Positions 7,916-57,506 of a stretch of DNA of 64,000 nucleotides are shown piece by piece; within the stretch, counting starts at the first letter, position 1, and each line of letters opens with the position of its first letter. This DNA is from Haliotis rubra (Eukaryota). The stretch is from positions 1,426,001-1,490,000 of the forward strand of contig NW_025765403.1 of the NCBI RefSeq assembly GCF_003918875.1, read 5' to 3'. A model generated the notes under the pieces. That model searched no databases, had not been told where the DNA came from, and saw only the letters and a list, made by a program, of their open reading frames with translations. Made by a program: the position numbers and the translations under genes.

Positions 7916-10900
7916 ATGGACAACGATGATGACCACGTCCATAGGTGGGATGTTATTTCAAGTTTATCTTGATTAAGATGATCTTCTCAAATATTATTCG
8001 AAGTATTCATGTTGTCAAATGAATTCATTTGATATATTTTCTGTTGGTTTTAAGGTACCTTAACATTCTAAACTATAGACATTTTCTTGTAAGCAACATG
8101 ATCTTGATGTAGAAGTAATGCAAAGTATAAATGAATTATCGCGTCACTGGATTTATTAATCCAGATGCTGTCAGTGGATTGTATAGTAGGTCCCCCAAGT
8201 GTTGACGCTACCTCCATATGGTGCTGGTATTCAACAGTTCGGGTTGGGGCAACAAAAATTACTTGAATTATTATGCAGATTTTGTAAGGGCCTGGTATCT
8301 CCCATATGTCATTTCTTTTCGATGATAACGAAGACACACTTTTCTTAGACGTCACTTTAAATAACGCCGTTTGATCCATATTCTCAGTGGTTGTGTCATG
8401 TTGAGTCATCTCTGCCATTACAGACCTGATTACGGACAAGATCAAGGTGATGGGAGAGGACGAGGTCGAATGAGAGGTCGAGGTCGATGGGGTCACGGAC
8501 GAGGCTTTAGAGGTGCCGGAGGATGGGGAAGAGGTGGTGGACGAAACGAAGACGAACACAATTTGGATCATGGAAGGTTTGGAGGGAGAGGGCGAGGAGA
8601 ACACAGAGGTAGGGGCGAAGGACACTGGGGAAGAGGTGCTGATCGCGCAGAGGAAGAAGGAAGAGGTCACAATGACGGTGATGGTGCCAGAGGAGGCCGA
8701 GGACAAGGGTTCCGAGGAAGAGGTGGAAGAGGGGGAGGTCATTACCTTGATTACAGGCAATTGCAAGAACTGCGGTCAAAGGATCCATCTACAATTGTTA
8801 TGACACTTGGCCAGGAATCAGGTCTCGGCTCACTCCTCAAACGACACAATCTTTCATCTCATATGATGTATGCGATTGTAGGTGCCCTTGCACAGGCATG
8901 TTTATGTAAATCTGCTCAGACTAACCTTATTGAACTCTTGCTCACTGTTCAGCGGTCAAAATTTTACGACCATGTCCCTGATGTTTTGAACGACATCAGA
9001 AACAGACCAAATGAAAATCCCAGAGAAAAGAGGCAGTTCATCAAAGACTTGATATCAGTTATGAAGGAACTGGCTACCAGACTGCCACATTCATACATTC
9101 ATGTTCTTGGAGTGAAGAGCTTCCTGGAAATGATCCTGCCTGAACTTGAACTAAAGTCTGATATCGTAGATGAAGAGATGCTTCAACACCTGAAGCAGCT
9201 GCAGGATATGCAAACGCCAACTGTTGACAGGACGACAAAAGAAGAAGGTGGGGATGAGAAAAAGGAGTATACTGATGGGACACCACCTAGTGATTTCAGA
9301 GATATGTCCATATTTCCAAATGTCGAGGACATTCACCCTGAGGAGAAACCTTTTCTTCGCAAGAACATAGATGTTGGTAGATACAATGACCTTCATCATT
9401 ACTTGGACGTCCAGTTCCGTTTGTTGAGGGAAGATTTTGTCTACCCTTTGAGGAACGGCATTGCAGAGTATCAAGCTGCCAATGTTCCAGGAGAGAAAGG
9501 TCAGAGACTGAAAGACATACGGGTCTATCATGATGTCCAGATCGTGCGGACAGTGTGCTCAGATGGTGGACTTCTCCACAGAATCATGTTTGACATGAGC
9601 AAGCTTCGCAAAATCAGATGGGAAAATTCTAAGCGACTGATATATGGATCGTTGGTCTGCTTGTCACATGACAATTTTGAAACCCTTCTCTTTGCTACTG
9701 TTTCTGATAGAGATCCAAAGAAACTTCAGGATGGTATACTTGATGTATTACTTGAAAATGATGAAGATCTTGATGACATCCTTTCCCTGGATACCCGTTT
9801 TGTAATGGTAGAGACATCAGCTTACTTTGAGGCCTACAGACATGTCTTGAGAGGTCTGCAGATGCTCCGTGATGGTGATCTTCCATTTGAAGAGTACATT
9901 GTCGAATGTGAGAGTGAGGTGAAGTCACCTCAATACCTCCGGGGTTTAAGGACTGTCAAATATGACCTGCGCCCACTTGTGGATGAAAAAACTGTTCTAA
10001 GGGAAGACACTGCTTTGAGACTGCAGAAAAGGGAGGTGAGCTACGACTTTAGTCGCGAATCACAGATTGCCAACAACATTGAAATACTGAATCATTTGGA
10101 TTGGCCGTCTGCCATCCAACTGCATCTTGATCCGTCACAGTACAAAGCCTTAAAAACAGCCCTCACCAAAGAGTTCGTCATTATGCAAGGACCACCTGGT
10201 ACAGGGAAAACGTATGTTGGTTTAAAGATTGTGAAGGCCCTGTTACACAACACAAAGACCTGGAATGCAAACAACAGATCACCAATGCTCATCGTTTGCT
10301 ACACAAACCATGCACTAGACCAGTTTCTTGAAGGAATAATATCCTTCTACAGAGGAAGTATCATCAGAGTAGGAGGAAGGATCAAAAGTGAGCAACTGGA
10401 GGATTACTCACTCAAAGCACAGAGACAAAGGGCACGAAAATTGCACGGTTCCAGAGATATGAGAAATACTGGACGGATGAGATGGGAAATTCGTAACAGT
10501 ATGATGACCCTGAAGCTTGAGATTGAAAAGATTGGTCAGCAAATAGAAGCAGCCGAGAGGGAGATATTACATGAAGATGTGTTGCGACCATTCATGGGTG
10601 AAAGCTATGATGATATGGTGATGGCGATGAATATGATGCTAATGCAGATGCAGGAAGCAAATGGCCATGTGCCACCACCAACCCCTGTCATGGTAGAGTG
10701 GTTGGGCATTGGTGCGTTTGGCGAAATGGTGAACCCAGCTGAGCAACCGCAACCAGGGGAAGACATTGAAAATGAGGACGAGGATGGTGGACTGATAGAT
10801 GTTCAGGAAGAAGCAGATCTCTTGCAAGAGCAGAGACAGATGCATGACATGGACGATGGTGACATGGAGGAAAGTGAACTTGACAAGCTTCAGAGAATGA

Positions 10901-13900
10901 TTGAGCATCTTCAGTATGAACGAGGTGGATATGTTGCCTTTGATGTGACAAATTTGGACAGGAACCCGAAGGAACAAGAAGATGCAATGCAGTTCCAGTT
11001 ACAGCCTGAAGCCCGAAGACGTCTTAAAAGACGTATTTTGAAAAGATTGAGATCCACACAAAGGATGACATCAGCAGAGGCTAATCGTGTCCGGGATCCT
11101 TGGGCACTCCAAATGAATGATAGATGGAAATTGTACAGATTCTGGGTACACTGTCTCTGTGAAAGACTGCAACGTGACATATCAACAAAGGAGGCTAGAT
11201 ACAAAGCAGTGGTAACTCAGTACAAAGAGTCACAGATGATTGAAGACAAACAGATCATGGAGACTGCAACAGTGATAGGGATGACAACAACAGGGGCAGC
11301 CCGCTATCAACAGGTGCTGTCGGAGATTGGCCCCAAAGTCATAGTTGTTGAAGAAGCTGCAGAAGTTCTTGAGGGACACATCATCACAACTCTGAGCAAG
11401 AAATGTGAACATCTGATACTTATCGGAGATCATAAGCAGCTGAAGCCAAACCCTACTGTATACAAACTTGCAAAGCAATTCAAGTTAGATCTGTCTTTAT
11501 TTGAGAGAATGATCAACAATGGCATGCACTGTGACACGCTGGCTCTTCAGCATAGAATGCGCCCTGAAATTGCCAGGTTAATGAAGCCAATCTACCCCAA
11601 GCTTGAAAATCATTCCTCTGTCCTCAATTATGAGAAGATCAAGGGGATATCTGACAACATGTTCTTCATCAACCATGGATATCAAGAAGAACATGACATT
11701 GAACGTGTCAGTCACGCCAATGAGTTTGAAGCTAGATATGTCGTAGCACTGTGTGAATATCTGATGAAACAGGGATATGAAAGATCACAAATCACAATTC
11801 TCACAACCTACTCAGGACAGCTACTGAAACTGAAGAAGATGATGCCAAAGCAGATTTTCCAGGGAGTCAGATTGACAGTGGTGGACAACTACCAAGGAGA
11901 GGAGAATGACATAATCCTTCTGTCACTCGTGCGAAGCAATGCTGAAGGAAGCGTTGGATTCCTGAAAATTGAAAACCGTGTCTGTGTGGCACTTTCACGG
12001 GCTAAGAAAGGATTATATGTCATCGGGAACTTTGATCTCCTTGCCCAAGAAAGTCAGCTGTGGAGGGAAATAAAGAAAGATTTGCAGATTAACAACCAGA
12101 TAGGAACAACCTTGAACCTATATTGTCAGAATCACCCGCGGGACACGGGCATTGCTGCAAAGAAACCGGAAGACTTCGGGAAAGCTCCTGAAGGTGGTTG
12201 CATGAAGCAGTGCACCTTCAGACTGGAATGTGGACATGTCTGTTCTCGACTTTGCCATCCTTATGACCCCAACCACGAAGAATACAAATGCAATAAACCC
12301 TGTCCAAAATCTATATGCCAGAACAATCACCCATGTCCACGATTGTGCTATCAGCAGTGTGAGAAATGCGAAGTGCCAGTCGAAAAGGTGATACCTCGTT
12401 GTGGACACAAACAGCTTGTCCCCTGTTGCATGAATCCCAGGAAATACGAATGTCAAGCTAAATGTGATAAGGTCTTGAAGTGTGGACACCCATGTGGAAA
12501 CCCATGTGGAATTGAGCATCAGTGCAAACAGATGGTGAAGAAGACGTGGAGATGTGGACACACAAGTGATGTTGAATGCATGAGGAAAGACTCGGCTGTC
12601 TGCAAGGCAAAATGTTCAACAATGCTGGAATGTGGACATACGTGTGCTGGCAACTGTCACGACTGTCATGAAGGAAGGCTGCACGTATCATGCCGTAAGA
12701 ACTGCAAGAGGATCCTTGTCTGTGGACACGAATGTAAGGACATGTGCAGCAACTGTCCCCCATGCAGAAATGTTTGTGAGAACCGATGTCCGCACAGCAA
12801 ATGTTACAAAATATGCGGCGAGATTTGTGTACCATGTAATGAGCCCTGTGAGTGGAAATGTCTGCACCATGCATGCACCAAGAAATGCAGAGAGCCATGT
12901 AATAGACCTCCGTGTGACGAACCCTGCCTGAACGTCCTTCGCTGTGGTCACCAATGCATCGGACTATGTGGTGAGCCTTGTCCACGTCTGTGCAGAGTGT
13001 GCAATCACGATGAAGTCACATCAATCTTGTTTGGCACAGAGGATGAGCCAGATGCAAGATTTGTTGAGCTTGAGGACTGTGGTCATATTGTGGAAGTATC
13101 TGCCATGGACAGGCTCATGCAAATGGATCCTGAAAATGATGCTATTCAGTTGAAAACATGCCCTCACTGCAAGACGCAGATTCGACGGAACACCAGATAT
13201 GGATCTCTGATCAAGAAAATGCTGAAGGATATAGACACAGTGAAAAAACGTTATATTGGAAAGATGACAGAATACGTGTTCTGAAAGCTAAACTTGAAGC
13301 TGAAGCCAACAGGGAAGTTGACCCACAAGAACGGAATGAAAAACTGGATATGCTGAAAAAGGGTTATGTCAACACTGAAGTTGGTCTTAATGCTATTGAG
13401 AATCAATTTCGTTTCTTGAAACGTGCGTCCAAATTATTTGATTCCTATGAAAAGCTTGCAGAGGACTGCAAAGAAGCCGTTCTACGTCCCGTTCTCAGGG
13501 ATGCCATTTCCAGCATGAAGGAGCTGGAGCAATTCCGAAAATGGCTCATGGGGACACGATCATCCCTCAGTGATCAGGATGTCTCAGATGCCCAGGATGA
13601 AGTTGACAGGAATAAGGCTATCATCAGGCTCTTAAAGGTAGAGAGAATTATAGCCATCAGAAACCCTGAAATGCCAGAGGCTTTGAAAAAGAACTCCAAG
13701 CTCTACAGGGGACTTTGAAATATGGCAAAAGGTTTACCAAACAACGGCAAGAAAGAGTGAAGAATATCTTCGAAATTCTAAAGAAGCATGTTCCAGAATC
13801 TGGTCTTGGTATATCTGAAGAAGAAAGGGTGGAAATAGTGAAAGCAATGGCACTCACAAAGGGACATTGGTTTAAATGTCCTAATGGTAATATATTTTTC

Positions 13901-14544
13901 GTAATGTTCTCATTTACCCATCTTTAAATGCACTTTTAGACTTTAGTTAAATTCCTTATGTTTCGATGCTAAATTTACATACGATCGTCCTGGTTCGGCC
14001 TTCACTGTCTTAGTTAATAATTTCTATAAATCACTGTTATTTGTTCAAAACCTGAAGTTATCATTTGAAAACAACCATTTCAAGAAAATAATTGTTGTTG
14101 ACAGACAGTTACTTCATATACTTTTGACAATTTTATTCACCTAAAAATGGGATATTTTAGATGAATCTCTAGTCTTGAAGTAAAGCATTTGGATGTAGGA
14201 TATTGTGTTTGGGGTCCAGCCACATCATGGCACAGGACAACAGATCTGGGTTCCAGAAATTGCCATTGAACTCGAGAATTGACAAGCGAACACTCCAAGT
14301 TCTATTCCACAATCTGATTCCTTAAGTAACTTAGTTACTTTCGATTTCAGGGCATGTCTATGCAATCGGAGAATGTGGTGGAGCAACCATGGTGTCGAAG
14401 TGTCCAGAATGTAACGCTACAATCGGTGGTACCGGGCACAGACTGAGAGGCGACAACGCCCTTGCACCAGAGATGGACGGAGCTGCGTTTGCAGCATGGT
14501 CAGAGCAGGCCAATCTTGGGAACTATAACCTGGATATGCTGTGA
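7916..14544 (+). CDS. ZNFX1: ZNFX1 paralog 1, NFX1-type zinc finger RNA helicase / RZ E3 ligase with N-terminal RGG tract, ~1895 aa after indel correction
   Basis: Exons 7916-7944 (MDNDDDHVH, phase 2), 8424-13886 (phase 1), 14351-14544. Motifs QGPPGTGKT, CYTNHALDQF, VEEAAE, IGDHKQL, SLFER, QHRMRP, VDNYQGEE, RVCVALSRAK; CGH-x-C NF-X1 repeats; ELEDCGH...CPHC RING-like finger; HWFKCPNG|HVYAIGECGG...CPEC...IGGTGH RZ finger. Two 1-nt deletions in A-runs (~13260, ~13686) join ORFs 8371, 13158 and 13715. Confidence 0.93.
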
Positions 14545-20079: not shown

Positions 20080-23000
20080 ATGGAGGAGTTCCCACCACTG
20101 ATGCCTGAAGCCAGGGCTGGAAAGAAGACCAGAGGTAAAGAGGAAAAGATGAAAGAACAGCCTACACCTGCACTTGGTAAACCTTGTTTGAAAGATCTGG
20201 CAAGCTTTCTGGAACAGAGGGAAACAACCGGCAGAGATGAACAGCTTTCAGATGACGAATGTGACAGCACAAGAACACAGAGCCCCATTTCTATCAGTTT
20301 ACCACCCTTATCAACAGTTCAACAGGATATGCATGGAACTGGAACGAAGGCTACAACGTCAAAACCATTGATAAAAGGAAAACAGAAAAAGAGAAAGTTT
20401 GTTTCTTTAGACTTTAACCTTCCATCAGCTAATTCAGAAACTCATCATGGAATGTATGGGAGCAATCTTCATGGAGCCCAGGGGCGTGAAACAGCCATCA
20501 GAGATTCCTTGAGGTCTCCCGCAAATGTGAAGCCAGATTATGAGATTGAAGATGACGCTGCAACACCCAAATTAGAATACCTTGATGACTCCAACACGGT
20601 GGCGAAAAGTGTGATGCAGAAATTGGAAAAGCAAAATCAGAGTTCAAATCTGTGCTATAATCATACCAGCACAATCCACATGATCGAAAACCCCTCCATG
20701 AGTGACCAAGGCGATGTGGGGAGAAGTCTGGCATATAACCCAGGCCTTCAACAAGGAGGACCATGTGCAGGCAAAAGGTATGACTGTAATACCAACACAA
20801 TCTCAACTGTCGAGGCAACACGTGTCTCTGAAACACACGTCCTTGTGGATAAACTGACAGAAGACAAAAAAAGCAACAAACCTTCAAAGAAGGGGAAGAA
20901 GCACAAGACACACATGGTGCCTGCTCCTGTTGAGATACTGGGATTTAAAACAAAGAATCCCAGTCGGAACACAAAAAGCGACAAAGGGAGTACAATTTCC
21001 AAAGCTTTAGACATTAAGATCTCAACGCCTAAACGTCCAGCACAACGAAAGACTCAAAGGCGAGTCATTCCCACTATCCAGCCTGATGACACGGACAGTT
21101 CAGATGAACCGGTGGAGCGAGACTATAAATGGATTCATAAAAAACTCACCGATAGAACGATTTCTTTGTCCCTCTTGATGTCTTTACAAAGTCAGCCATC
21201 CCCTTTAATAGCACTGACTCTTGCCAGGAATGTTGATCTGGATGATCTGTTGAATGATGAAGCATCTGACATAGAAGACTGTCTTCTACTTTTGTCTCTG
21301 ATTTCCAGAGGATGTGAGTGTCAAGTTGTGCCAAAGACTGGATTGCAAATCCTTACAAAGATGACAGTGTTTGTCTCAAAACATTTACGCTCCCTAACTA
21401 CACGACTCGCAGAAAGAGTGCAAACAATTGAGTCATTGACAATTCAAAACTTTTTCAGAGATATGGTGACAATATTGAAAGAGATGGTACACAGAGTGAA
21501 GGACACTGGTACTGATCCAACAGCAATACCCACTCTAATTCTTATTGCTGCAGCTAAACAGTTGACAATTCCTGAAGAGTCACTACAGGCGATCCTCCTT
21601 GATCTGAGGTCATTGAGAGACGCGAGATTCAAAGTATGTGAAGATACTTTCTTGCATAAGGATGACAATTTCCGTCAAATAAAGCTCATGCCCACAAATG
21701 ATGACATAAATCCCGCCATGAAACCACTCCTGAAGAAAAACAAGGTAGTCGGCAAATACACAGACGTTGATGAATATTTAGATGTTCAGTACAGGCTACT
21801 CAGGGAAGACTTCATTCAGCCTTTACGAGAAGGGGTTTCAGAGTATCAAGACCTATTGGCCATGAAGGACAGAAGAGCAACACGTCTGTATCAGAATGTA
21901 CTAGTCAGGCGCTTCTTCTGCTCAGAAGATGGAATCGTATACCGATTACAATTTGATGTAAGCAAACTTTCACATGTTGACTGGGGTAATACAAAGAGAC
22001 TCATGTATGGATCAATGGTATGCATCTCATCTGACAACTTCCAGACAGTACGGTTTGCAATAATTAGTGATAGAAAGCCTGAGAAACTTCAACAAGGGAG
22101 AATTGATATCAAGTTTGATAATAAAGTCAAACTTGATCCAGGAACGAAGTTTACAATGGTGGAAACGCCAGCTCTGTTTGTTGCATATCGACATGTGCTG
22201 ATCGGAATTCAGCAGATAGAGAGTAACAAACTTCCAATGTCTGAATACTTTGTGGAATGTCGTGCAACACTGGCACCTCCAGAGTATTTGACCAAAGATG
22301 ACGCCATCAGCTATGATATGAGTGGTCTTGCAAAGACGTCAGAAGACGTCAGCAGAGCTTCATTCAAGTCTGTATGTGTACACCAGGAAGTGGAATGGCC
22401 TATTGCTAGCGATCTTGAAATGGACGAATCCCAGTTCAATGCGTTCCATACAGCTCTTACTAAGGAACTTGCCATCATTCAAGGGCCTCCTGGAACCGGC
22501 AAGACCTATGTTGGTCTGAAGATTGTGAAAGCCTTGATGCAAAACAGACATGCATGGAACCCTGATAACTCGAGACCATTACTGGTTGTTTGCTACACCA
22601 ATCATGCACTCGATCAGTTCTTGGAAGGAATTTTGACATTTTTCAAAGCGAAGGTTCTCAGAGTGGGTGGGCGATCAAAAAGTGAAATACTGGTTAACCA
22701 TAACCTCAATCGCAAAAGATCTGAGCTGTTCAGGCGTAAAGCCCTCCTAGATGAAGACATCAGTGAAATTCTGGAAATCCGACATGAATTGAAGGACGAC
22801 TTCCTTGTGTGCCAAAGGGAGATAGAGGAGTATGGACAACAAGTTGATGCAACAACAGAAGGAGTCCTTCATGAAGACTATTTAAGGCCCTTTATGAAGC
22901 AGCATTTTAGGAAGATTACCAAAACATTCGGTAAGAAGGACCGTTTTTCTGCCCTCCTGGAATGGCTGGATATTAAAGGAATAGGCAAAGAGGTCTCAAC

Positions 23001-26000
23001 GCGCCCCACTCATACAGCAGCAGCCAAGGCAAGCGTAGAGAAGGATGACGTTGGGCAGGTTGATGAACACGAAGAAGAGGATGAGACAGAAAAGGAAAGG
23101 AAGCTTGATGACATTGATGAATACCTGCAATTACAAACAAGAAATTTATCCATGTATAGGAATCAGTGTCTAGCTGTTAGTCTTCATGACTGTGATTTGA
23201 CAGATGACAAGTGGAAAACTAAACACAAAACGGCTATGAAAAGGGATAGCAGACAAACACTGAAAACACGTTTGAGAAAGGAACTTTTGTCCCACGCAAA
23301 AATGGAAACGCATGAAGCATCCAGCGTGGATGATGCAAGTGCTCTGACAATAGCTGACCGATGGCGATTGTATAGGTACTGGGTTGACCAGTTTTGCCAA
23401 AAGATGCACCACCTGATGGGACCTCTGAAGACAGTATGTCAGAATGCTGCTGATAGGTACAAAGAAGCAAATGCTTTGGTCGACAAATACGTCTTTGAAC
23501 ATTCCTCGGTGATTGGCTTAACTACAACGGGGGCAGCGAGGTATCAGAACCTGCTTACAGATATACAGCCACCGGTTGTAATTGTGGAAGAAGCTGCTGA
23601 AGTATTGGAAGGACATATCATTACATCCCTTAGTCCAGGGTGCCAGCACCTCATCCTGATCGGTGACCACAAACAACTTAGGCCAAATCCAAACGTGTAT
23701 GCACTAGCCAGGAGATATAACTTAGATCTGTCTCTATTTGAACGGATGATCAACAATGGTTTACATTGTGATTGTCTGGAACTGCAGCACAGAATGAGAC
23801 CCTCCATCTCCAAGGTATTAAGGCACATCTATGACAAGTTGAAGGATCATGAATCTGTGTTTGGATATGAGGATGTCCTTGGAGTTTCAGAGAACATTTA
23901 CTTCATTAATCACTCTGTTCAGGAATCAGAAAACAAGGAACTCATGAGTCATCTGAATGACTTTGAAGCACAGTACATCTCGAAACTGTGCCAGTATTTA
24001 CTGAAACAGGGTTACAGTCACAGACAAATTACAGTCCTGTCAACATATTCTGCTCAGGTATCACACTTGAGGTCAATGATGAAAGAAGAGAGACAAGAAG
24101 GTCTACTGATAACAGCTGTTGACAATTACCAGGGAGAAGAAAATGATATCATTCTTCTGTCCTTAGTACGCAGCAACCAAGAAGAAAAGATTGGGTTTTT
24201 GAAGACCGACAACAGAATATGTGTCGCCCTATCAAGGGCAAAGATAGGACTATATGTTATTGGGAATTTTGATTTACTATGTCGGCACAGTGAAACTTGG
24301 AAAAATATCACCCAAGACCTTAAAGATTCAAATCAATTTGGACCAGGTTTGAAACTCTACTGCCAGAGCCATCCGAGTGCAGAGGGCATTGTTGTCACTG
24401 ACCCAAAAATGTTTCAATTGGTCCCTGAGGGTGGATGCATGAAGCAGTGCCATTATGTATTGGACTGTGGACATAGCTGTACTCTGAAATGTCATGCATA
24501 TGACCCAAATCATGTGTTGTTTTCCTGCAAGAAACAATGTCAGAAGCAGATTTGCAAACTTGGTCATCCATGCCCAGCTACTTGCTCAGAGGAATGCCCT
24601 CCCTGTGAGTTCCCAGTCGTCAAAACTATTCCTAAATGTCAGCATACACTGGAGATACCATGCAGCGTGGATCCGGAGTTGCACGTTTGTCCCAATGCGT
24701 GTGACAAAATGTTAGAATGTGGCCATAAATGTGGAAATCTGTGTGGGTATGAACACATCTGCTATGAGACTGTTTCCAAAACATGGCCATGTGGTCACAC
24801 AGGAGAGGTACTGTGTACAGAGCAGGATCAGGCGCCTTGTCTTGTGGGATGTAATGCAATACTGCAATGTGGACATTCATGCGAAGCATTATGTTATGAA
24901 TGCAACGAAGGACGGCTTCATATGCCCTGCAAACGGAAGTGTGACAAGATTCTTTTTGCGGCCATGCATGCAGAGCCTCTTGTTCGAAATGTCCCCCCTG
25001 TACATTTGACTGTGAGAAAGCTTGCTCTCATGGAAAATGCCAGGATCCCTGTGGCCAGAAATGTCAGGAATGTGACAAACCATGTAAATGGGCTTGTGCA
25101 CATTTCAAATGCACACAAATGTGTGGAGACATTTGCGATAGAGATCGCTGTGACAAACGTTGTCGGCGAAAGCTCGAATGTAAACACACCTGTATTGGTC
25201 TTTGTGGAGAAACCTGCCCACGCCTCTGTAGAATATGCCACAAAGATGATGTTTCACCCTTTCTTACTGAGTCAGAAGACATTTCAACAGCCAGGTTTAT
25301 TCTCCTTGAAAACTGTGGACACATTGTCGAGGTACATTCTTTGGACAGAATAATGGAGAAATGCAAAGCCAGCAAACAAATACAACTTCCAAGCTGCCCA
25401 TGGTGTAACACTCTTATAAGACGTAATGCCAGGTATGGGGCTCTACTAAATCAGATACACAAACAAATAGAAATAGAAAAGGCTGCCCTGGGTGAGATGA
25501 CAACAGAAAGGCTCACAACCCTAAAGATGGTGTTGCATACTGACATAGATGGTCTTGAATGTCAAGCTGATGTATGTGAACTGATAGCAGGTGCTGGAGA
25601 AGATGAATCTCGCCTGGTGGCAGTTAAAAACCAGAAGACATTTCTCATTGGAATGGAGAACTTGAAGGCACGAATATGTGAACAAGGAGAGGTGGATGAT
25701 CAAGGAGGAATTTGGCAGGAGATCGCGAATTTTGAGCAGTGGCTGAAAATCCAGCGAGATGCCTTTACTGAGCAGGAAATCTCAGACGCTCGGAACGAAT
25801 TCCAAAGGATTACCATTTGTGTGTTTTTACATGACTTGTTATCACACGAAACAAAAGATGGGTTGCTACCCTCGGCCATGGCACTGCTGCAAAAGGTTAG
25901 GGCTGTCATCAAGGCGAAGAAAAAAATTACTGAAGATGAATATCAGCTCGTTACTGAATTGAAGAATGAGGTTTGCAACCTTTTCCCTGATAGTGAGATG

Positions 26001-38600: not shown

Positions 38601-40080
38601 GGCATGCCAAATGCACTTCAACCTGTGGAGACATGTGCAACAAGAAAAAGTGCAATGATATATGTAGGAAGAAACTAAAATGTCGTCACCCTTGCATTGG
38701 ACTTTGCGATGCCCCGTGTCCAAGCGTATGCAAAAATGCAACCCAGAGGAAATACCGAAAGGTCTGGACGTCTTTGGAACTGAAATCTCCGGGAACACCA
38801 GGTTCATTCAACTGGAAGACTGCTCTCACATATTTGACGTGAAAGGCATGGATGAATATATGGAAGGACACTCAGGAGAAGATGAGAAAACAGTTGTCCA
38901 ACTTAAAACATGCCCAAGCTGCCAGACCCCAATTAGACGGAACCAGCGTTATGTGAACATTATAAAAGGGACTCTTTCAGACATTGAAAAGGCCAAACTG
39001 AAAGTCAGTCGAAATGGACGAAGAGTGAAGGAGTTGGAACAATTAATTTTTTCGATGCAAAGCAGATTTCAAGGCTCAGACAGGGGGGTCGTAAAACGAC
39101 TGACAACAGGCAGCCTTGTTCCGTCGGAGGGTCGCTTGTCGGCACAGGTCAATCAGTTGCGAATCATGGAGAGAGTAGTTCGCCTTGAGAAACTTGTAAG
39201 ATCAGATGCCGCCAAGTACAGCCCTGATCTGTATGACCAAGTTCTAAGAGCCATACATACCTTCAAGGAATGGCTTGTAATTCCGAGGTCTTGTTTTGGG
39301 CAGCAGGAGAGGCAGGATAGTGATGACGAGATGAAACGCCTATCTATGAGCCGTTTTCTCATTACCGCATCCCAGTTGGTTGACTCAGCAGGGAAGGGAA
39401 CTAGTGCTGACATGAATATGCGGCTTCAAGATATCATTCGACGCCTAGCGTCGTCAGAGAAGCACGAATCAGTTCTGCCTGACGCCAAACTATTGGTGGA
39501 AGAAGTCAAGGGTCATGTATCAGAATCCAAGACTGGAGCATGTGATGAAGAGAGGGTCGTGTTTCTAGAAGCGACTGGTCTGAAGCAGGGCCACTGGTAC
39601 AAGTGCAAAGAAGGTAGGTATATTGTATGTTTTGTATGTTTGTATTATGTGTAATAATAAGCCACATGTGCTTACTTTTCTTGCTTGTATTGGAGTATGT
39701 CTAATGGTAATACTTATACATCGTCTGACCAGTGCTATCAGAGTCTTTAGTGGACTGTAGATTGTAATTGCACAATGATAAATCTAAGCAAGTTTTAAAC
39801 TATCGGACAAGAGTGGAAATTGGTTGCATTATCCATTGTATAGACATTAAGTACTGTGTGTTACGTTTCCTCAGGTCATGTCTATGCTATCGGTGAATGT
39901 GTCAGACCTTACGAGGAGGTCACGTGTCCCGAGTGTGGAGGATCTATAGGAGAGGCTGCCCAAAGTCTGACAGAGGACAATGCCTTCGCTCCCGAGATGT
40001 ACGATGATGAGGACCTGCCGTGGTCTGAGGAGAGTGACCATGAGCTTGCACTAAAGCTAGACAAGGAACTTAATGGATAA
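32684..40080 (+). CDS. ZNFX1: ZNFX1 paralog 3 with two N-terminal RHIM-like motifs and a TRADD-N-like domain, ~2150 aa after indel correction
   Basis: Phase-consistent exons 32684-33200 (ph1), 33487-34134 (ph1), 40-nt micro-exon 34307-34346 (ph2), 34571-39613 (ph1), 39875-40080, all GT-AG. Helicase motifs intact. Frameshifts at ~35840-35875 (+1), A-run 36285-36290 (+1) and A-run 38732-38736 (-1) join ORFs 34458, 35812, 36278 and 38680. Confidence 0.87.
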
Positions 40081-43973: not shown

Positions 43974-44016
<43 letters not shown>

Positions 44017-46295: not shown

Positions 46296-46443
46296 TGCTT
46301 ACTTACTGTTTACACATAACAATATCAATCGCCAAAACGTAGCAATATTCAAGCAGTATTTGCATCAATTTCACGTGTAGAATGATTCTATAGGGTATAA
46401 AGAGAAACTAGAATTCATGATATGATACACAAGTACAAGAAAT

Positions 46444-46555: not shown

Positions 46556-46994
46556 NNNNNNNNNNNNNNNNNNNNNNNNNNNNNNNNNNNNNNNNNNNNN
46601 NNNNNNNNNNNNNNNNNNNNNNNNNNNNNNNNNNNNNNNNNNNNNNNNNNNNNNNNNNNNNNNNNNNNNNNNNNNNNNNNNNNNNNNNNNNNNNNNNNNN
46701 NNNNNNNNNNNNNNCATTTAAAGTAACCTGATCTGCATCTCAAAATCTGGAATGAGAGTTTGTGCAGCGTTCATAATACCATCAGATCTTAGGATAAGAT
46801 AATTCAAGATTCAAGAAAAATACAACTTTGCAAACATCTTGCACAATCCAAATAACTGATTCCTTTCTATAACATCAGATAAAAACTTGGTATTTCTTTT
46901 GGGACATGATTGCCTACTGACACATCGATCTCATCACGTCCGTCGAGGCTGGAAAGAGTGCATCAATCTTACATTGTAGCTCTCACAAGTTTCC

Positions 46995-50447: not shown

Positions 50448-50466
50448 TGTGAATTGTTTCGGAAAG

Positions 50467-50635: not shown

Positions 50636-50862
50636 GTTTCGGAAAGTGTGTGGCAATGTCAAGGGAGATAACTCGTGTGGCTCTGTTTTCAGTGAAGCCG
50701 ATATCTCTGTGTCGGGAACGTATCCATGTCAGTCACATGTTCGAAACTGGCAGCTGATTCGGTTAATTGATATATTTTTATGTACTTACTTTTTGCCCAA
50801 CAATGTCATTATGTCATACTACTCTAGGCTGGATTCTTTGCATTTGTACTCAACGAGAATAT

Positions 50863-51035
50863 GCTTCACATGTAACTTCTGTTACAGCTTCACACATGTA
50901 ACTTCTGTTTCACATGTAACACATGTAACTTCTGTTACATGTAACCTCTGTTACAGCTTCCTTCTAAGCTTCACATGTAACCAGCAGCTTCACATGTAAC
51001 CTCTGTTACAACCTCACATGGAACTTCTGTTACAG
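50863..51035. repeat. ~24-bp minisatellite CTTCACATGTAACTTCTGTTACAG
   Basis: About 7 degenerate copies; the last ends at the predicted splice acceptor 51035/51036. Confidence 0.8.
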
Positions 51036-51070: not shown

Positions 51071-54000
51071 ATGGACGAAGAAAGCGCGGACGAGCAAGCA
51101 CTGCCAAGGAGGAGGTAACTATGACAACCCAGACAAGCGTGACATACAAATATACATGTACACAGAAACGGTATTTCTGAGGTTATAAATAATTATTATA
51201 TTAGTATTATTACACAAGAAGAATATATGTTTAGCTGCTGTAACAGTGATTATATGATACAAGTATTGGCCGTATATTTGAAACTTGCCTGATTAAACAA
51301 CTATCTCAAGAAATATCCTTTCTCATAGTGAGTGAGTAAGTAAGTGAGTTTAGTTTTACGCCGCACTCAGCAATATTCCAGCTATATGGCGGTGGTCTGT
51401 AAATAATCGAGTCTGGACCGGACAATCCAGTGATCAACAGCATGAGCATCGATGTGCTAATTTGGGAACCGATGACATGTGTCAACAAAGTCAGTAAGCC
51501 TGACCACCCGATCCCGTTAGTCGCCTCTTACAACATTACAGAATAATATAGTATGAAAGTAACTAATATAGCTGCATAAAGCATCAAAAGGTATCTACTC
51601 AAATTAGGAAATACCTAAGAAATGTAAGGTTTATTATATTTACATATATATTGTTATACAAAGCCACTCGTACAACATCCAGTTCGGAAATACATGTATT
51701 TAGACAAAAACACAAAGCGAGATTGTTCACAACCGTAATACTTCTTTTGCAATGTTTACAGAGGTGGCACTAGTGGACGTGCGGGTAGGGGAAGAGAAAG
51801 AAGGCAAAATACACCAAGGGGTCCCTCAAGGATTACAGCTGGTACACTAAGAGACATGAAATCTCAGGATCCTGCTGAAGTACTCACCCGGCTGAGCAGA
51901 CCCAACAGTGGACTGATGGAGTTTCTGAAGCAGCAGGATCTCAGCGTCGATGGAACCAAATTAGCCCTAGCCGCACTAAGTAAGGCCTGTCTGTGTGAAT
52001 CAATGCCCGAGGGATTGAATACGATGATCATGACCGTCCTCCTCACACCATTTTTAGAATCTACTTTACTTCGTCTCCTCACTCAGCTGATTATGGAACC
52101 ACGTGGCGACAATGGTGTGGTCAGAGACTGTTTGCCACTTATGAAGGAGATGCTGAGTAAAATGCCAACAGAAGGTTGGGGCAAAGTTCAGACGATTGCT
52201 GTCTTAGTGCAGAGCCTATGGGAGAAAGGTGGCATGAAAGACGAAGATCTCAATAAAAACATGCTTGAAGTTTCCGACCTCCTCCTGAAGTCTAAACCCC
52301 CTCCTCCGACACCAGCAGAAGGAGCAACAGGTGGCCCAGGTGTCAATGCACAGAATGAAAACCAACCACCGCCTGAGAACTTTCGTGAACTACCAATTAT
52401 TCCTCGGAAAGATGAATTGGATGGGACAACGGAAGTTTTTCTTCTCCCAAATAAAGTGGAAGGTCCTTTTAGGGACCTTGAACATTATCTTGAATGCCAG
52501 TTTCGTCTTTTCCGAGCAGATGTAATCATACCACTGAAACAAAATATTGTCGACTTTCAAACTGTTTCTGAAAACACGTCAGTTGGATACAGGATCTACA
52601 CAGATGTTCAGATTATCAGACCTGTTTGCACACACAATGGTCTTGGGTACAGGCTTGCCTTTGATACCAAACCGCTACGACGTGTTAACTGGGATGCAAC
52701 AAGGAGGCTGTTATTTGGGTCACTACTTTGCTTGTCCTCAGACAATTTCAAAGATAACATTTTCTTTGCCACAGTTGATCAAAGGGAGAAGGAAAACCTA
52801 AAGAATGGACTTGTTGATGTGCAGTTCATCTCCCAGTATGATGAGGTGGCACGGATAACTCGGGACGAAAGGTTTGCAATGGTGGAGTCTCCTGCCTACT
52901 TTGAATCCTACAGATATATACTAGAGGGAATGAAAGATCTCACAGACAGAAACTTTCCATTCCAGCGGTACATTGTCGAGTGTCAAAATGATGTTCAGAA
53001 ACCGCGGTACTTGCGGGAACAACAACATGCTCTGTATGACTTGCGACCTCTTCTGGATGACGATCACAAAATAACAGATTTAGCGGACACTGCTAGTTCA
53101 GATAGGGCTTTTCCAGCAGGATCAGATATAGCAAAGGATGTGAATGTTGACGACATTTCAACTTGGCCAATGCCAGATTTTCTACATCTCAACGTCTCCC
53201 AGCATACAGCTTTGAAAAATGCCTTAATGAGAGAATTTGTTCTCATACAAGGACCTCCAGGTACAGGCAAGACATACCTTGGAATCAAAATCATGAAGAC
53301 TCTGCTCCATAACTCACAAGTGTGGCTTCAAGGACAGGACAATCTGCCAATTCTTGTTGTATGCTATACCAACCATGCATTGGATCAGTTCTTAGAAGGG
53401 ATTTTGAAGTTTTTCAAAGGTAGACTCATACGCGTTGGTGCTCGAAGTAAGAGTGAAACCATGCAAGAATATTCCTTGAAGAATGCTAGGCAGAGAGTAA
53501 GAGATCTTAGATCCCTGCCTATGACTGTTCATGCAGGGAAACTGGAGACTCTAAGAGCAATGGAGAGCCTGAAGGCAGAAATTCATACCACAGCAGCCAA
53601 ACTTGAAGTGGCAGAGAGAGAAATTTTGCATGAACGTTGTTTGAAAGGCTTTATGACAGAAGCCATAGCAAGCTGCTTCACTGTTGGGAATGACTATGAA
53701 ACTTGCCAGATAGCTGTTTGGTTAGGGATCAAGAAGCGATTGTTTGATATTGAAGATAGGGGTGAGTATCTTCAACACGAACTGGAAGAGCGGAAGTTGG
53801 CAGATGAAGGGGAGGAAGAAGAGTATGAAGAAGAAGAAGAGATGATTAATATCGAAGTAAATCACAGCCAGAGAAGGTTAGAGGAAGACTTGATTGATTC
53901 AGATGATGAATATGACTTCGATGATGTACTTACCAAAGCACAATCATTAGATGCTGATATTCAGCATGTTCGCAGGGAATGCATAGGGTTAAACATAACT

Positions 54001-57000
54001 AACCTCGATGCTTCCACAGTTACAATGTTCATGTCAAAACAACAGAAGAAAATCCAGGAGGACAAACAGAGGCAGAAGAGATCCCTGAAAGTCAGTCTCC
54101 GCGCGAAACTGCGTTCAACTGACAGAATGACATCACGCGAAGCTGTGAATGTACATAACATCTGGAGACTGCACCTAAAAGACAGGTGGAGGTTGTACAG
54201 ATATTGGGTGGATGTGCTTTGTCGACAGGCCAAAGGTGAAATCAGAGACAAAGAAGGTGATTACAGGCGTCTGACTACACAATACAAAGAGGTCTTAATG
54301 CAAGAGGACAGAACCATCCTTCAGAGCTGCTCCATCATAGGGATGACAACAACAGGTGCAGCAAGATACCAGAGGGTTCTGAACGAAATTGGTCCCAAGA
54401 TTATTGTTGTAGAAGAAGCAGCTGAAGTGCTTGAGGCTCATGTTATAGGCACTCTCAGTCGGCGATGTCAACATCTAATTCTCATTGGCGATCACTTACA
54501 GCTCAGGCCAAATCCAACTGTTCACAAGCTTGCAAAGAGGTACAACCTGGAAATATCCCTGTTTGAGAGGATGGTGAACTCTGGTATTCCACATGATACA
54601 CTTCTTTGGCAACACAGAATGCGCCCTGAAATAGCGGACGTTGTTCGGCCACTCTATAAGGATCTGAAAGATGACGAGTGTGTTAAGAAGTATGACAATG
54701 TGAAGGGTATTGCACACAATGTGTACTTCATCGAACATCAGCACCCACATGAATATGATGAAGAGACAAAAAGCTTTATGAATGAATATGAAGCTCAATA
54801 TTTAATAGGTCTCTGCAAATACCTTTTTAAGCAAGGTTATCATGCGGAGCAAATTACAATATTGACAACATATTCCGCCCAAATGCATTGCTTAAAGAAT
54901 AGGATGCCAAAATCACAGTTTGAAGGGGTGAGAGTTGTTTCTGTTGACAGCTATCAAGGAGAAGAGAATGATATTGTACTTTTGTCTCTTGTCCGCAGTG
55001 GAGATGAAACGAAAATTGGGTTCTTGAAAGAAAACAACAGGGTATGTGTTGCACTCTCAAGGGCCAAGAAAGGACTGTATGTTATTGGAAATTTCAATCA
55101 CATCACTACATACAGCCCACTGCTAAAGGACATTGCAGCAAATGCATCTGCGAAAAGATGCCTCGGCCCTGCTCTGCAGCTGTCGTGTCAAAATCACCCT
55201 GGTGATATGGGAGTTGGAGTATGTGATCCAAGTGATTTTGAAAGAGTCCCTGAAGGAGGCTGTACCAAACCATGTCTTTTCCGACTTTTGTGTGGTCATG
55301 TGTGTCCACGAATGTGTCACGTGATTGATGCAGAGCACAAATCCATCCTCTGTTCAAAGCCATGTAAACGACAATGTCAGAAATGTAAAAGTTACCACTG
55401 TGACCTCCCTTGTTACAAGCCGTGCAGACCCTGCCCTGTACTCGTGCAGAAAACCCTACCAAGGTGTGGACACGCTCAAATGATTCCTTGTGAAACGGAC
55501 GAGGGGAACTTCCAATGTCAGGAAACTTGTAGGGAGAGCCTACCATGTGGCCATGAATGCCAGGGCAAATGTGGACAGCCTCATCCGCCATGTACTATAC
55601 CAGTTGAAGTCTCCAAGCCATGTGCTCATACCATAGCTGTTGCTTGCAGTGATCGAGATACAGCTGCCTGCAATCATGAGTGTGGTGAAATTCTCAGCTG
55701 CGGTGATCCATGCAAGGGTAAGTGTGGTACATGTCACCAAGGGCGTCTGCATCAGCCTTGTCCTTCGGAATGTAAACGAATCCTCATTTGTGGACACGAG
55801 TGTCAGTCGTCTTGCAGTAACTGCCCACCGTGTACCAGGAGGTGCGAGAACAGATGCAACCACAGCAAATGTCCCAGGAAATGTGGAGATCCTTGTGCTT
55901 CCTGTAAGGAGCAATGCCAGTGGAAATGTCGCCACTTCAAATGCAGCATGCCGTGTGGGGATGAATGTGACAGACCTCGATGCAATGATTGGTGCAGGAA
56001 TAAACTACCATGTGGTCATTACTGCATTGGCGTTTGTGGTGAACCATGTCCAAAGCTGTGCCGAGAATGTGACAAGGAGAAAATGCCTGATGTGTTCCTC
56101 GGAAGAGAAGATGAGCCAAAGGCCAGATTTATTGAACTGGAAGACTGCAAACACATTTTTGAAGTCAGAGATTTGGATTTGTTCATGGACGGACCATCTG
56201 AAGACGAGGACAAGACATTAGTTAAACTGAAGGAATGTCCTAGATGTCTCACACCAATCAGAAGGAATCTCAGATATGGCAACGTCATTAAGCAGGCACT
56301 GTCATGTATTGAGAAAGCAAAGAGGAAGGTTATTGGCGATAACAAGAATGTGAAGGAGCTCAGAGACTCTATTGACAGGATGAAAAATCGGCTTCGTCCA
56401 GATGACTTGGGTCCTGTGAATGACCTCTTAAAATCTTTTTCGGTTCATTCAGTGACTATCCTGTCAACCCAAGATCGACAGATCCGTATCGTTAAGCAAA
56501 TATCCTGCATTGAAAGGACAGTGAAGGAGAGTCTCGGAAAATTCAAACAAGCTGGTAGTGAAACGTATGGAACTTTATTAAAGTGTCTGAAAGACTTCAA
56601 AGCTTGGGCCCTTCTTCCAAGGTCCTGTTTCAGCAAACAGGAGGTTCAGGATGCACAGAGGGAACTTGAGCGCTTGAGTCTGCTGAAGTACCTTATAGAC
56701 GCAAGGGAATGGATAGATCTTGATAAGAAGGACGTTGCTGTACGGATTATGAGGAACTTGGTAGCGACGATCAGGAGGCTCGAATGTCCCGCAAAAATAG
56801 AGGATGGCAAAATGGAGGATGCAAAGAAAATGAAGGAGGATGTAAAGGAGTTTGTGCCAGGGTCAGGCATCGGAGTGACGGATGAGGAACGACTGATGAT
56901 TGTAGAAGTTATGGGACTCAACAGAGGACAATGGTACAAGTGTAAGAGAGGTGAGTTGGTGCATTGGTAAGTTTTGTTTGGTTTTACTTTAAGGGTTTGA

Positions 57001-57506
57001 AATATATCTTAAGTTTTCACCAGCTAGTGTGACACTATATTAAGATTTGCAGACTGGTGTTATAAATCACATTTGAATCTTAACTAAGATAAATATTCGT
57101 CGAGACACCTGCCTGCAGCTTTGAGCCCTTTAGCTGCAATGGGGGGCAGTGTTTATGATTCGAATCCCATATGCGCCGAACTTAGAATAATTATTTTGTC
57201 CATTGTTATAACAAGTGTTCATGCATTTCATCGTGATTGTAATGGATAATTAACTTGACTGTATTGCTGACATATTTAATAGTTGTTTTATGTTTTTACC
57301 CAGGTCATGTCTATGCTATCGGTGAATGTGGAAGAGCATACGAGGAGGCCACGTGTCCCGAGTGTGGAGGATCTATAGGAGGGGCTGCTCATAGACTAAC
57401 AGAGGACAATGCCTGGGCTCCTGAGATGGACGATGCAGAGGACCCGCCGTGGTCTGAGGAGAGAGACTATATGCTTGCTCTGCAGCTTCAGTTTGGTGGC
57501 CGCTGA
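51071..57506 (+). CDS. ZNFX1: ZNFX1 paralog 4, uninterrupted, 1811 aa, intact RZ finger and MIU-like tail
   Basis: Exons 51071-51114 (MDEESADEQALPRR, ph2), 51762-56950 (ph1), 57304-57506, total 5436 nt in frame. All SF1 motifs, NF-X1 repeats, ELEDCKH...CPRC, QWYKCKRG|HVYAIGECG...CPEC...IGGAAH. Confidence 0.95.
51328..51532 (-). mobile_element. SINE-like repeat, family B (intronic)
   Basis: Homologous to other family B copies. Confidence 0.8.

What the first reader, a model, noticed from the sequence alone, without database searches (positions are those of the whole stretch)
7916..57506. Four-gene ZNFX1 array with swapped N-terminal modules and partitioned E3 catalysis: a candidate sensor/helper antiviral system
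Seen: four same-strand ZNFX1 paralogs keep all helicase motifs and the RING-like finger but carry four unrelated N-termini (RGG, basic disordered arm, RHIM-like plus TRADD-N-like, short RG). The two with large novel N-termini (2 and 3) are exactly the two with a damaged RZ catalytic dyad, while 1 and 4 are intact. Known: ZNFX1 is an interferon-induced RNA helicase and RZ-type E3 ligase that oligomerises on RNA and is single-copy in mammals. Inference: 2 and 3 act as localising or signalling adaptors that co-assemble with catalytically active 1 and 4, like paired NLRs with integrated domains.
Basis: partly seen in the sequence, partly recalled or inferred. Interest (0 to 1): 0.88.

Follow-up and report, generated by a model that had tools for sequence, protein, structure and literature searches.

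The report
Abalone ZNFX1 antiviral-helicase gene array
This stretch of blacklip abalone DNA holds four neighbouring copies of the antiviral RNA-helicase/ubiquitin-ligase gene ZNFX1, which have been kept across abalone species with different front ends and, in two copies, an altered catalytic finger; the idea that they work as sensor/helper pairs is untested, and three of the four copies are out of frame in this draft assembly.

Summary
The window is Haliotis rubra contig QXJH01000146.1:1426001-1490000. It holds four same-strand ZNFX1 paralogs: g1 7916-14544, g2 20080-26701, g3 32684-40080 and g4 51071-57506. All four keep the helicase motifs and the zinc ligands of the Miz-like finger.

The RZ observation holds. 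In g1 and g4 all six key residues are present. g2 lacks the nucleophile Cys, as do its orthologs. g3 has Gln at the general-base His.

- Only g4 is open throughout. g1, g2 and g3 carry 2, 1 and 3 single-base indels, all absent from H. asinina and H. rufescens.
- A fifth paralog lies about 22-26 kb upstream of the window.
- The g3 His loss is not genus-wide: Cys in H. asinina, His in H. rufescens and H. cracherodii.

The indels are probably assembly errors. The assembly is Nanopore-based, RefSeq calls g1 a LOW QUALITY PROTEIN, and there are no stops and no relaxed constraint.

The array is conserved, with dN/dS of 0.13-0.24. "RHIM-like" is plausible for g3: two conserved motifs that also occur in a small Haliotis protein. 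"TRADD-N-like" is unsupported.

The N gap at 46556-46714 is intergenic. Sensor/helper co-assembly remains speculation.

The parts
7916..14544 (+). g1, the canonical-type ZNFX1 paralog (RefSeq XP_046560628.1, 'LOW QUALITY PROTEIN', 1893 aa). Exons: 7916-7944, 8424-13886, 14351-14544. RGG-rich N-terminus. RZ complete. Two single-base deletions in the C-terminal coiled-coil part of the big exon.
20080..26701 (+). g2. Exons: big exon 20080-26085, last exon 26544-26701. About 365-aa basic disordered N-terminal arm. RZ lacks the nucleophile Cys. The position of human F1575 in the Miz-like domain is Thr. One single-base deletion in the Zn-finger stalk, so the annotated product (P0121, 1757 aa) ends early.
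32684..40080 (+). g3. Five coding exons: 32684-33200, 33487-34134, 34307-34346, 34571-39613, 39875-40080. All GT/AG splice sites are kept. Three single-base indels (two insertions, one deletion) in the big exon. No H. rubra protein for this gene is on record.
32738..32767 (+). g3 RHIM-like motif 1 (I-M-V-G-x-x-N-T-L-N), conserved in four Haliotis species.
33074..33103 (+). g3 RHIM-like motif 2 (T/V-M-V-G-x-x-N-T-L-N), conserved in four Haliotis species.
33594..33827 (+). Core of the g3 N-terminal alpha/beta domain. It is shared only with the small Haliotis proteins P0253 and P0254. There is no Pfam, PDB or fold match.
39875..40080 (+). g3 last exon, the second half of the RZ finger. The nucleophile Cys and the CxxC are kept. 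The general-base His is replaced by Gln.
51071..57506 (+). g4 (RefSeq XP_046560632.1, 1811 aa). Exons: 51071-51114, 51762-56950, 57304-57506. The only copy with an unbroken frame. Short RG N-terminus. RZ complete. The position of human F1575 is Leu.
46556..46714 (.). Assembly gap in the g3-g4 spacer. It is intergenic. Continuity across it is not established.
7044..7203 (.). Second assembly gap, 0.7 kb upstream of the g1 start codon, at the end of a 34-bp minisatellite.

Best explanation
This is a conserved tandem array of ZNFX1-family genes in abalone, built from old gastropod ZNFX1 lineages that have diverged in function. The genes encode RNA helicases that are also ubiquitin ligases.

SHOWN
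- Every copy keeps the armadillo region, the SF1 helicase core, the NFX1 zinc-finger stalk and the Miz-like finger.
- The copies differ in their N-terminal tails and in the RZ finger.
- g1 is the canonical type, with an RGG tail and a full RZ. g4 is a compact version of the same architecture.
- g2 has been kept by purifying selection without an RZ nucleophile.
- g3 gained an N-terminal module: two RHIM-like motifs plus a Haliotis-specific domain.

INFERRED MECHANISM
- All four bind RNA and polymerise as human ZNFX1 does.
- g1 and g4 pass ubiquitin from an E2 bound to the Miz-like domain to the RZ Cys.
- g2 works without that relay, as a scaffold or regulator, or in a one-step RING-like mode. 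C. elegans ZNFX-1, which lacks an RZ, is a precedent.
- g3 adds a homotypic-motif output through its N-terminal module.

The six frame breaks in g1-g3 are most likely leftover Nanopore assembly errors rather than gene death.
For: IDENTITY AND SYNTENY
- The window maps to the H. rubra record; g1 and g4 are RefSeq proteins.
- The order g1-g2-g3-(X)-g4 on one strand is seen in H. rufescens, and g2-g3 adjacency in H. asinina.
- Orthologs of all four genes exist in H. asinina, H. rufescens and H. cracherodii.

CONSTRAINT
- dN/dS between H. asinina and H. rufescens is 0.13 (g1), 0.23 (g2; helicase 0.14), 0.24 (g3) and 0.13 (g4), at dS about 0.6-0.7.

PHYLOGENY
- g1 groups with g0 and with one gene set of other gastropods.
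- g3 and g4 are sisters (100% bootstrap) inside a second gastropod clade (100%).
- g2 sits on a long separate branch.

DOMAINS
- Domain and motif checks.

FRAME BREAKS ARE PROBABLY ARTEFACTS
- All six are 1 nt long and unique to this assembly.
- Five of six sit in or next to runs of 4 or more identical bases, which hold only about 5% of coding bases.
- There are no stop codons in the ortholog frame.
- Substitutions specific to the H. rubra branch give N/S ratios of 0.48-0.62, like the intact H. asinina genes.
- All g3 splice sites are kept.
- The upstream paralog g0 is also out of frame for about 340 nt.
- The assembly is Nanopore wtdbg/DBG2OLC with two Racon rounds and one Pilon round (PMC6774278).
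- RefSeq labels g1 'LOW QUALITY PROTEIN'.
Against: - No reads or transcripts of H. rubra were available, so the frame breaks could be real, at least in one haplotype.
- In g2 and g3c the orthologs do not have a pure homopolymer at the site. An error model there needs an extra substitution.
- All functional statements about g2 and g3 rest on residue identity and on analogy with human ZNFX1. There are no expression or activity data for any abalone copy.
Confidence: 0.6

Rival explanations
1. g2 and g3 are adaptor or sensor subunits that co-polymerise with g1 or g4 and borrow their RZ catalysis, like paired NLRs with integrated domains.
For: - The RZ-dead state of g2 is conserved and the gene is under purifying selection.
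- g3 carries an integrated module that also exists in stand-alone proteins.
- Human ZNFX1 polymerises and autoubiquitylates in trans, and the preprint's authors propose that Miz and RZ domains of different protomers may cooperate.
- g3 and g4 are close sisters, with 47% identity in the armadillo region.
Against: - The armadillo homodimer domain is only 20-34% identical between g2 and the others, and between g1 and g3/g4.
- The RZ of g3 is intact in H. rufescens and H. cracherodii.
- The arrangement is same-strand tandem with 5-11 kb spacers, not divergent pairs.
- C. elegans ZNFX-1 has no RZ at all, so an RZ-less copy need not depend on a helper.
- There are no co-expression or interaction data.
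Confidence: 0.2
2. At least some of g1, g2 and g3 are genuinely disrupted in H. rubra, either as recent unitary pseudogenes or as segregating null alleles of a fast-turnover immune gene cluster.
For: - Six frame-breaking indels are present in the deposited sequence.
- No H. rubra protein for g3 is on record, and g2 is annotated only as a truncated 1757-aa product.
- Three of the sites are not simple homopolymer length changes relative to the orthologs.
- Immune gene arrays often carry presence/absence and null variation (general knowledge).
Against: - There are no stops and no large lesions, and the splice sites are intact.
- The N/S ratio on the H. rubra branch is not raised, even downstream of the breaks.
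- Break density is even across five paralogs, about 0.3 per kb, as expected of random assembly error.
- The assembly was lightly polished.
Confidence: 0.25
3. g2 is a regulator or decoy rather than a signalling partner. It would be an E3-inactive copy that competes for RNA or for viral antagonists, or caps ZNFX1 polymers and so damps the response.
For: - g2 lacks the RZ nucleophile, and Thr replaces the Phe whose Ala mutant in human ZNFX1 (F1575A) is defective in E2 binding. Both changes are conserved in its orthologs.
- g2 sits on a long branch.
- Its disordered arm evolves fast, at dN/dS 0.54.
Against: - This rests purely on residue-level inference.
- The ATPase motifs are fully conserved, which argues for an active helicase rather than a passive decoy.
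Confidence: 0.1

Closest known systems
Human ZNFX1 (SF1 RNA helicase with a bi-catalytic Miz + RZ E3 module; bioRxiv 10.1101/2025.10.14.682297)
   Same: g1 and g4 share its whole architecture. This includes the armadillo region, the ZNFX1 domain, helicase motifs with EEAAE as motif II, the NFX1 Zn stalk, the Miz-like zinc ligands, the Ub-binding helix Ile, and all six RZ residues. g1 is 43-44% identical to vertebrate ZNFX1.
   Different: The abalone genes are multi-copy and arrayed. g2 lacks the RZ nucleophile and has Thr at the F1575 position. g3 has Gln at H1881 and Phe at I1835, plus an added N-terminal module. g4 has Leu at F1575.
C. elegans ZNFX-1
   Same: It is a ZNFX1 family member that lacks the RZ domain, as stated in the preprint. 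This makes it a precedent for g2.
   Different: g2 keeps a recognisable, conserved RZ remnant (zinc ligands, no nucleophile) rather than having none. No sequence comparison with the worm protein was made here.
RHIM and cryptic-RHIM amyloid adaptors (RIPK1/RIPK3/ZBP1/TRIF; Drosophila IMD/PGRP-LC/LE), as defined in PMC13506858
   Same: Short conserved hydrophobic-x-hydrophobic-Gly cores followed by x-x-Asn sit in an otherwise disordered tail, present twice in g3. The small protein P0254 carries a Gln-containing variant (A-Q-V-G-x-G-N-x-M) ahead of the same domain.
   Different: The canonical tetrad has Gln at position 2, where g3 has Met. There is no Pfam RHIM match. Amyloid formation is untested.
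Paired plant NLRs with integrated domains, and fungal NLR/amyloid-motif/HeLo-type effector systems
   Same: A sensor-type NTPase carries an extra N-terminal module that is shared with separate small proteins. Family members with unequal catalytic equipment are encoded side by side.
   Different: The protein family is different (SF1 helicase/E3, not STAND NTPase). The genes are in same-strand tandem rather than head-to-head. The small proteins P0253 and P0254 are encoded on other chromosomes. No interaction evidence exists. This is analogy only.

Membership tests
ZNFX1 family | ZNFX1 domain (PF25396) followed by an SF1 UPF1-like helicase (AAA_11 + AAA_12) | tested here: met
   All four genes match, at E from 1e-13 to 1e-42. 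In g3 the matches are spread over three frame pieces.
ZNFX1 family | Helicase motifs I, II, III, V and VI intact | tested here: met
   GPPGTGKT, EEAAE, GDHxQL, YQGEEND and VALSRAK are present in g1-g4, identical in type to vertebrate ZNFX1.
ZNFX1 family | NFX1-type zinc-finger stalk and Miz-like finger with its zinc ligands | tested here: met
   The paralogs are 47-54% identical to one another in the stalk and 40-54% in the Miz-like region. The CxxC, CxH and CPxC ligands align in all four. The position of the E2-binding Phe (human F1575) is F in g1 and g3, L in g4 and T in g2.
RZ-type E3 finger (RNF213/ZNFX1) | Zinc ligands C-x3-H...C-x2-C plus the catalytic Cys and His (human C1860/H1881) | tested here: met
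   This row is for g1 and g4: all six residues are present with human spacing. Pfam PF20173 is recorded for their RefSeq products.
RZ-type E3 finger (RNF213/ZNFX1) | The same six residues in g2 and g3 | tested here: not met
   g2 has no nucleophile Cys and C-x5-H spacing. The His position is not conserved and its orthologs have no PF20173 hit. g3 keeps the Cys but has Gln at the His position (Cys in H. asinina, His in H. rufescens and H. cracherodii).
RHIM | An 18-20-residue segment with core tetrad (V/I)-Q-(V/I/L/C)-G (PMC13506858) | tested here: not met
   The g3 tetrads are I-M-V-G and T/V-M-V/F/I-G. There is no Pfam RHIM hit at E up to 10. The relaxed pattern nevertheless occurs only in g3 orthologs and P0254 among 487,508 residues scanned.
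RHIM | Forms amyloid and mediates homotypic signalling | not testable with these tools
   No experimental or reliable predictive test was available.
TRADD-N domain | Sequence match to the family profile (Pfam TRADD_N) or to solved TRADD chains | tested here: not met
   No Pfam hit at E up to 10. There was no TRADD hit in the PDB sequence searches, with either the single sequence or the profile. phmmer over 1.84 billion representatives found only two Haliotis proteins and one low-complexity hit.
TRADD-N domain | Fold match | tested here: inconclusive
   The AF2 model from four sequences has mean pLDDT 49. Foldseek against the PDB gave nothing below E 0.1 and no TRADD chain among the 50 best matches listed.
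Paired sensor/helper immune receptors | Physical hetero-association and genetic interdependence of neighbouring paralogs | not testable with these tools
   Only indirect data exist: the armadillo dimer domain is 20-34% identical between lineages and 47% between g3 and g4.
Unitary pseudogene | Stops, lost splice sites and relaxed constraint on the lineage | tested here: not met
   There are no stops in the ortholog frame. N/S on the H. rubra branch is 0.48-0.62, against 0.54-0.72 for intact H. asinina g2 and g3. Splice sites are kept. Only single-base indels are present.

The most novel reading that the evidence does not exclude
g3 may be an RNA-sensing ZNFX1 that signals by templated, RHIM-like homotypic assembly. 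On this reading, polymerisation on RNA would cluster its two N-terminal motifs and the adjacent domain. The cluster would then recruit small Haliotis proteins of the P0254 type. These carry the same motif-plus-domain module, followed by a Gly/Ala-rich hydrophobic segment that may insert into membranes. The result would be a helicase-to-amyloid-to-membrane executioner pathway in a mollusc, comparable in logic to ZBP1-RIPK3-MLKL or to fungal NLR/HeLo systems.
Probability: 0.12. Interest if true: 0.85.

Novelty: new variant of a known kind. Interest (0 to 1): 0.5.

Why it matters
ZNFX1 is single-copy in mammals (general knowledge, not tested here). Its two-step Miz-to-RZ ubiquitin relay and its polymerisation have only just been described. 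Abalone offer a natural dissection of that machine:
- a canonical copy (g1);
- a compact copy (g4);
- a copy kept at dN/dS 0.23 (dS about 0.6 between H. asinina and H. rufescens) without the RZ nucleophile (g2);
- a copy that gained a RHIM-like module (g3).

If the paralogs are expressed, they indicate which parts of ZNFX1 can be lost or replaced while the gene stays useful. g3 would also link an RNA helicase to motif-driven signalling in an invertebrate without interferon.

For abalone aquaculture, where herpesvirus disease matters, the array is a candidate antiviral locus.

The practical lesson is that this H. rubra draft carries about one frame-breaking indel per 3-4 kb here, so apparent pseudogenes in it need read-level checking.

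Tried and rejected
- Pfam at E up to 10 on the g3 N-terminal exons, the g2 arm, the g1 RGG tail, P0253 and P0254: no RHIM, TRADD_N, Death or other domain. NCBIfam gave nothing either.
- PDB sequence searches with the g3 domain and with its profile: no TRADD. The only results were weak hits (E 0.03-1) of the hydrophobic part of P0253/P0254 to the fusion-peptide region of pneumovirus F proteins. I treat these as compositional; nothing was fetched.
- phmmer of the g3 domain against 1.84 billion representatives: three hits, two of them real.
I dropped that row and sent it nowhere else. The run with four rows gave pLDDT 49, so the Foldseek result is uninformative.
- Intergenic ORFs (42677-50999, 61476-61865, 898-1248): no Pfam family. 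ORFs at 30352-31318 and 45650-46380 are translated simple repeats.
- Search for the downstream MFS gene in 57.5-64 kb, as an independent control for assembly errors: not found in the window.
- Rejected: that the frame changes are short introns. The paralog and ortholog alignments run through them with only 1 nt difference.
- Rejected: that the gap hides the extra paralog X of H. rufescens. X is sister to H. rufescens g4, a lineage-specific duplicate. This rests on inference only, and the gap was not filled.
- The paper by Blasi et al. 2022 on metazoan ZNFX1 could not be read.
Full report
**Source and gene models.** The best hits of the large ORFs are Haliotis proteins. g1 is 100% identical to RefSeq XP_046560628.1 of Haliotis rubra. 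Its gene lies on GCA_003918875.1 contig QXJH01000146.1 at 1433916-1440544. The window is therefore 1426001-1490000 of that contig.

Exon bounds come from the RefSeq products of H. rubra (g1 P0127, g2 P0121, g4 P0244), from orthologs (g2 P0122/P0123, g3 P0005/P0004/P0246) and from direct reading of splice sites:

| Gene | Coding exons |
|---|---|
| g1 | 7916-7944, 8424-13886, 14351-14544 |
| g2 | 20080-26085, 26544-26701 |
| g3 | 32684-33200, 33487-34134, 34307-34346, 34571-39613, 39875-40080 |
| g4 | 51071-51114, 51762-56950, 57304-57506 |

All four share a phase-1 intron at the same place inside the RZ finger, between the first Cys and the His. I searched exon by exon and frame piece by frame piece, always by reference. 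I built no joined or frame-corrected sequence, so the joined step was left out.

**The gap.** The N run at 46556-46714 lies in the g3-g4 spacer, 6.5 kb after the g3 stop and 4.4 kb before the g4 ATG. tblastn with all paralogs and orthologs finds no ZNFX1 homology between 40080 and 51071. A 37-codon ORF enters the gap from the left out of a CA-rich simple repeat, and the right flank stops within five codons. Nothing coding can be shown to cross the gap, and it does not affect any of the four frames.

The gap does leave the g3-g4 join unverified. Synteny supports the order and strand: H. rufescens has g3, X and g4 on one strand, and H. asinina has g3 with g4 65 kb further on. I did not look up the missing letters. 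A second N run (7044-7203) lies 0.7 kb upstream of g1.

**Reading frames.** Only g4 is open throughout. Nucleotide alignment to the H. asinina and H. rufescens genes shows two single-base deletions in g1, one in g2, and two single-base insertions plus one deletion in g3. The orthologs run in one frame at all these places. Every other indel in these exons is a multiple of three.

The breaks are not introns, because the alignments continue across them with only 1 nt of difference. The evidence on their origin is as follows:
- Five of six lie in or beside runs of four or more identical bases, which hold about 5% of coding bases.
- No stop codon appears when the window is read in the ortholog frame.
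- Substitutions assigned by parsimony to the H. rubra branch give N/S of 0.62 (g3), 0.48 (g2), 0.47 (g4) and 0.50 (g1, 3' part). On the H. asinina branch the values are 0.72, 0.54, 0.30 and 0.41. There is no rise downstream of the breaks.
- The upstream paralog g0 is also out of frame for about 340 nt in this assembly.
- The assembly is Nanopore wtdbg/DBG2OLC with two Racon rounds and one Pilon round (PMC6774278).
- RefSeq labels g1 'LOW QUALITY PROTEIN'. From my own knowledge, that label marks models corrected against the genome sequence.

I judge assembly error about three times as likely as real disruption, but no reads were available to settle it.

**Conserved core.** Pfam finds ZNFX1, AAA_11 and AAA_12 in all four. 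Motifs I, II (EEAAE, as in vertebrates), III, V and VI are intact. The Miz-like finger keeps its zinc ligands. The position of human F1575, whose Ala mutant is defective in E2 binding, is Phe in g1 and g3, Leu in g4, and Thr in g2 and its orthologs.

**RZ finger.** The preprint gives C1849, H1853, C1869 and C1872 as zinc ligands, C1860 and H1881 as nucleophile and general base, and I1835 on the ubiquitin-binding helix. I checked the numbering on the 1918-aa Pongo protein P0204.

| Gene | RZ state |
|---|---|
| g1, g4 | All residues present, with human spacing. |
| g3 | Cys kept. Gln at the His position and Phe at the Ile position. Its ortholog has Cys at the His position in H. asinina, and His in H. 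rufescens and H. cracherodii. In the latter two species the exon is almost identical to g4's, which suggests gene conversion. |
| g2 | No nucleophile, two extra residues between the first Cys and the His, a diverged helix and a variable tail. All of this is shared by its orthologs and by the C-terminus of X. |

It is genus-wide for g2 and lineage-specific for g3.

**N-termini.**
- g1 has about 115 aa with 35 RG/GR dipeptides, conserved in composition in three species.
- g4 has about 45 aa with a short RG stretch. Vertebrate ZNFX1 N-termini are also Arg-rich, so g1 and g4 look like variants of the ancestral tail.
- g2 has about 365 aa that are basic and rich in K, S, T and P, starting at the same Met in all orthologs. 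This arm has dN/dS 0.54.
- g3 exon 1 is acidic and disordered-looking. It contains two conserved copies of a motif, (I/V)-M-(V/F/I)-G-x-x-N-T-(L/I)-N.
- g3 exon 2 encodes a conserved domain of about 110 aa with dN/dS 0.23.

A relaxed pattern for the g3 motif occurs nine times in 487,508 residues of fetched proteins. All nine are in g3 orthologs or in P0254. P0254 is a 400-aa uncharacterised H. cracherodii protein that starts with a Gln-containing variant of the motif, followed by the same domain. P0253, from H. rufescens, has the domain alone. Both then carry a Gly/Ala-rich hydrophobic stretch of about 40 residues.

The canonical RHIM tetrad is (V/I)-Q-(V/I/L/C)-G (PMC13506858). g3 has Met where that tetrad has Gln, and there is no Pfam RHIM hit. 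'RHIM-like' is therefore a fair description, but membership is not shown. TRADD-N has no support from Pfam, from PDB sequences, from a profile or from the low-confidence fold.

**Evolution.** An NJ tree (1615 columns, 100 bootstraps) puts g1 with g0 and one gene set of other gastropods. It puts g3 and g4 as sisters (100%) inside a second gastropod clade (100%), and g2 on a long separate branch. X of H. rufescens is sister to H. rufescens g4.

dN/dS between H. asinina and H. rufescens is 0.13 (g1, 3' part), 0.23 (g2), 0.24 (g3) and 0.13 (g4), at dS 0.6-0.7. All four are long-lived constrained genes. g2 and g3 change about twice as fast as g1 and g4.

By domain, the armadillo region and the coiled-coil linker are the most diverged structured parts: the armadillo region is 20-34% identical between lineages and 47% between g3 and g4.

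**Interpretation.** The best-supported reading is functional divergence within a conserved array. g1 and g4 are complete ZNFX1 machines. g2 is an RZ-dead helicase, possibly also altered in E2 binding, kept for another role. g3 is a copy with an added homotypic-motif module.

It has no direct support here. It is weakened by the divergence of the dimerisation domain and by the intact RZ of g3 in two species.

Multi-copy ZNFX1 in molluscs is not new. Three genes are reported in Aplysia (PMC9334734), and that paper cites a metazoan survey by Blasi et al. 2022 that I could not read. [quoted passage not shown] As far as I could search, what is new is the residue-level partition of the E3 module and the N-terminal module of g3.

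- P0204 (orang-utan) served only for residue numbering.
I removed the row and did not send it elsewhere.
- In my private reasoning I briefly recalled from memory short RHIM-core fragments of mammalian RIP kinases and the start of a mammalian ZNFX1. The RHIM definition used is the one quoted from PMC13506858.
- Weak PDB hits to viral fusion proteins were not followed, and nothing viral was fetched.

Noticed in passing
window 2658-7033: A 34-bp minisatellite of about 128 copies (70-80% matches) runs up to the N gap at 7044-7203, just upstream of g1.
   Followed up: no
window 40136-43858: Downstream of g3 lie a 28-bp minisatellite (40679-42466, about 65 copies) and 52-, 120- and 199-bp repeats, with strongly negative GC skew.
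   Followed up: no
window 33834-34032: A 102-bp in-frame tandem duplication (2.0 copies, 96% identical) sits in g3 exon 2. It adds 34 aa after the domain and is absent from H. asinina, H. rufescens and H. cracherodii.
   Followed up: partly
L008:10001-16156 (H. rubra contig, 22-26 kb upstream of the window): A fifth same-strand ZNFX1 paralog, g0 (P0155, annotated as 1317 aa). Against the 1880-aa and 1859-aa orthologs it is out of frame for about 340 nt and then returns to frame.
   Followed up: partly
L007:2-1624 (H. rufescens) and P0003/P0252: H. rufescens and H. cracherodii have an extra array member, X (2230 and 2231 aa). It has a g4-like body followed by a g2-like, RZ-dead C-terminal module, with the junction inside one continuous exon. 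This suggests module shuffling within the array.
   Followed up: partly
P0004/P0246 C-termini against window 57304-57506: The RZ exon of g3 in H. rufescens and H. cracherodii is closer to g4's RZ (84% identity to window g4) than to window g3 (75%). Gene conversion between g3 and g4 in that lineage is likely.
   Followed up: no
P0253 residues about 147-190; P0254 residues about 225-268: A Gly/Ala-rich hydrophobic stretch of about 40 residues lies in the small proteins that share the g3 domain. A profile gave weak, sub-threshold hits (E 0.03-1) to the fusion-peptide region of pneumovirus F proteins, probably for compositional reasons.
   Followed up: no
window 30352-31320 and 45650-46380: CA-rich 12-bp and irregular simple repeats give long spurious ORFs in several frames on both strands.
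   Followed up: yes
window 46444-46554: A 37-codon ORF starting with ATG runs into the assembly gap. It looked to me like the start of a transposase helix-turn-helix, but this was not tested.
   Followed up: no
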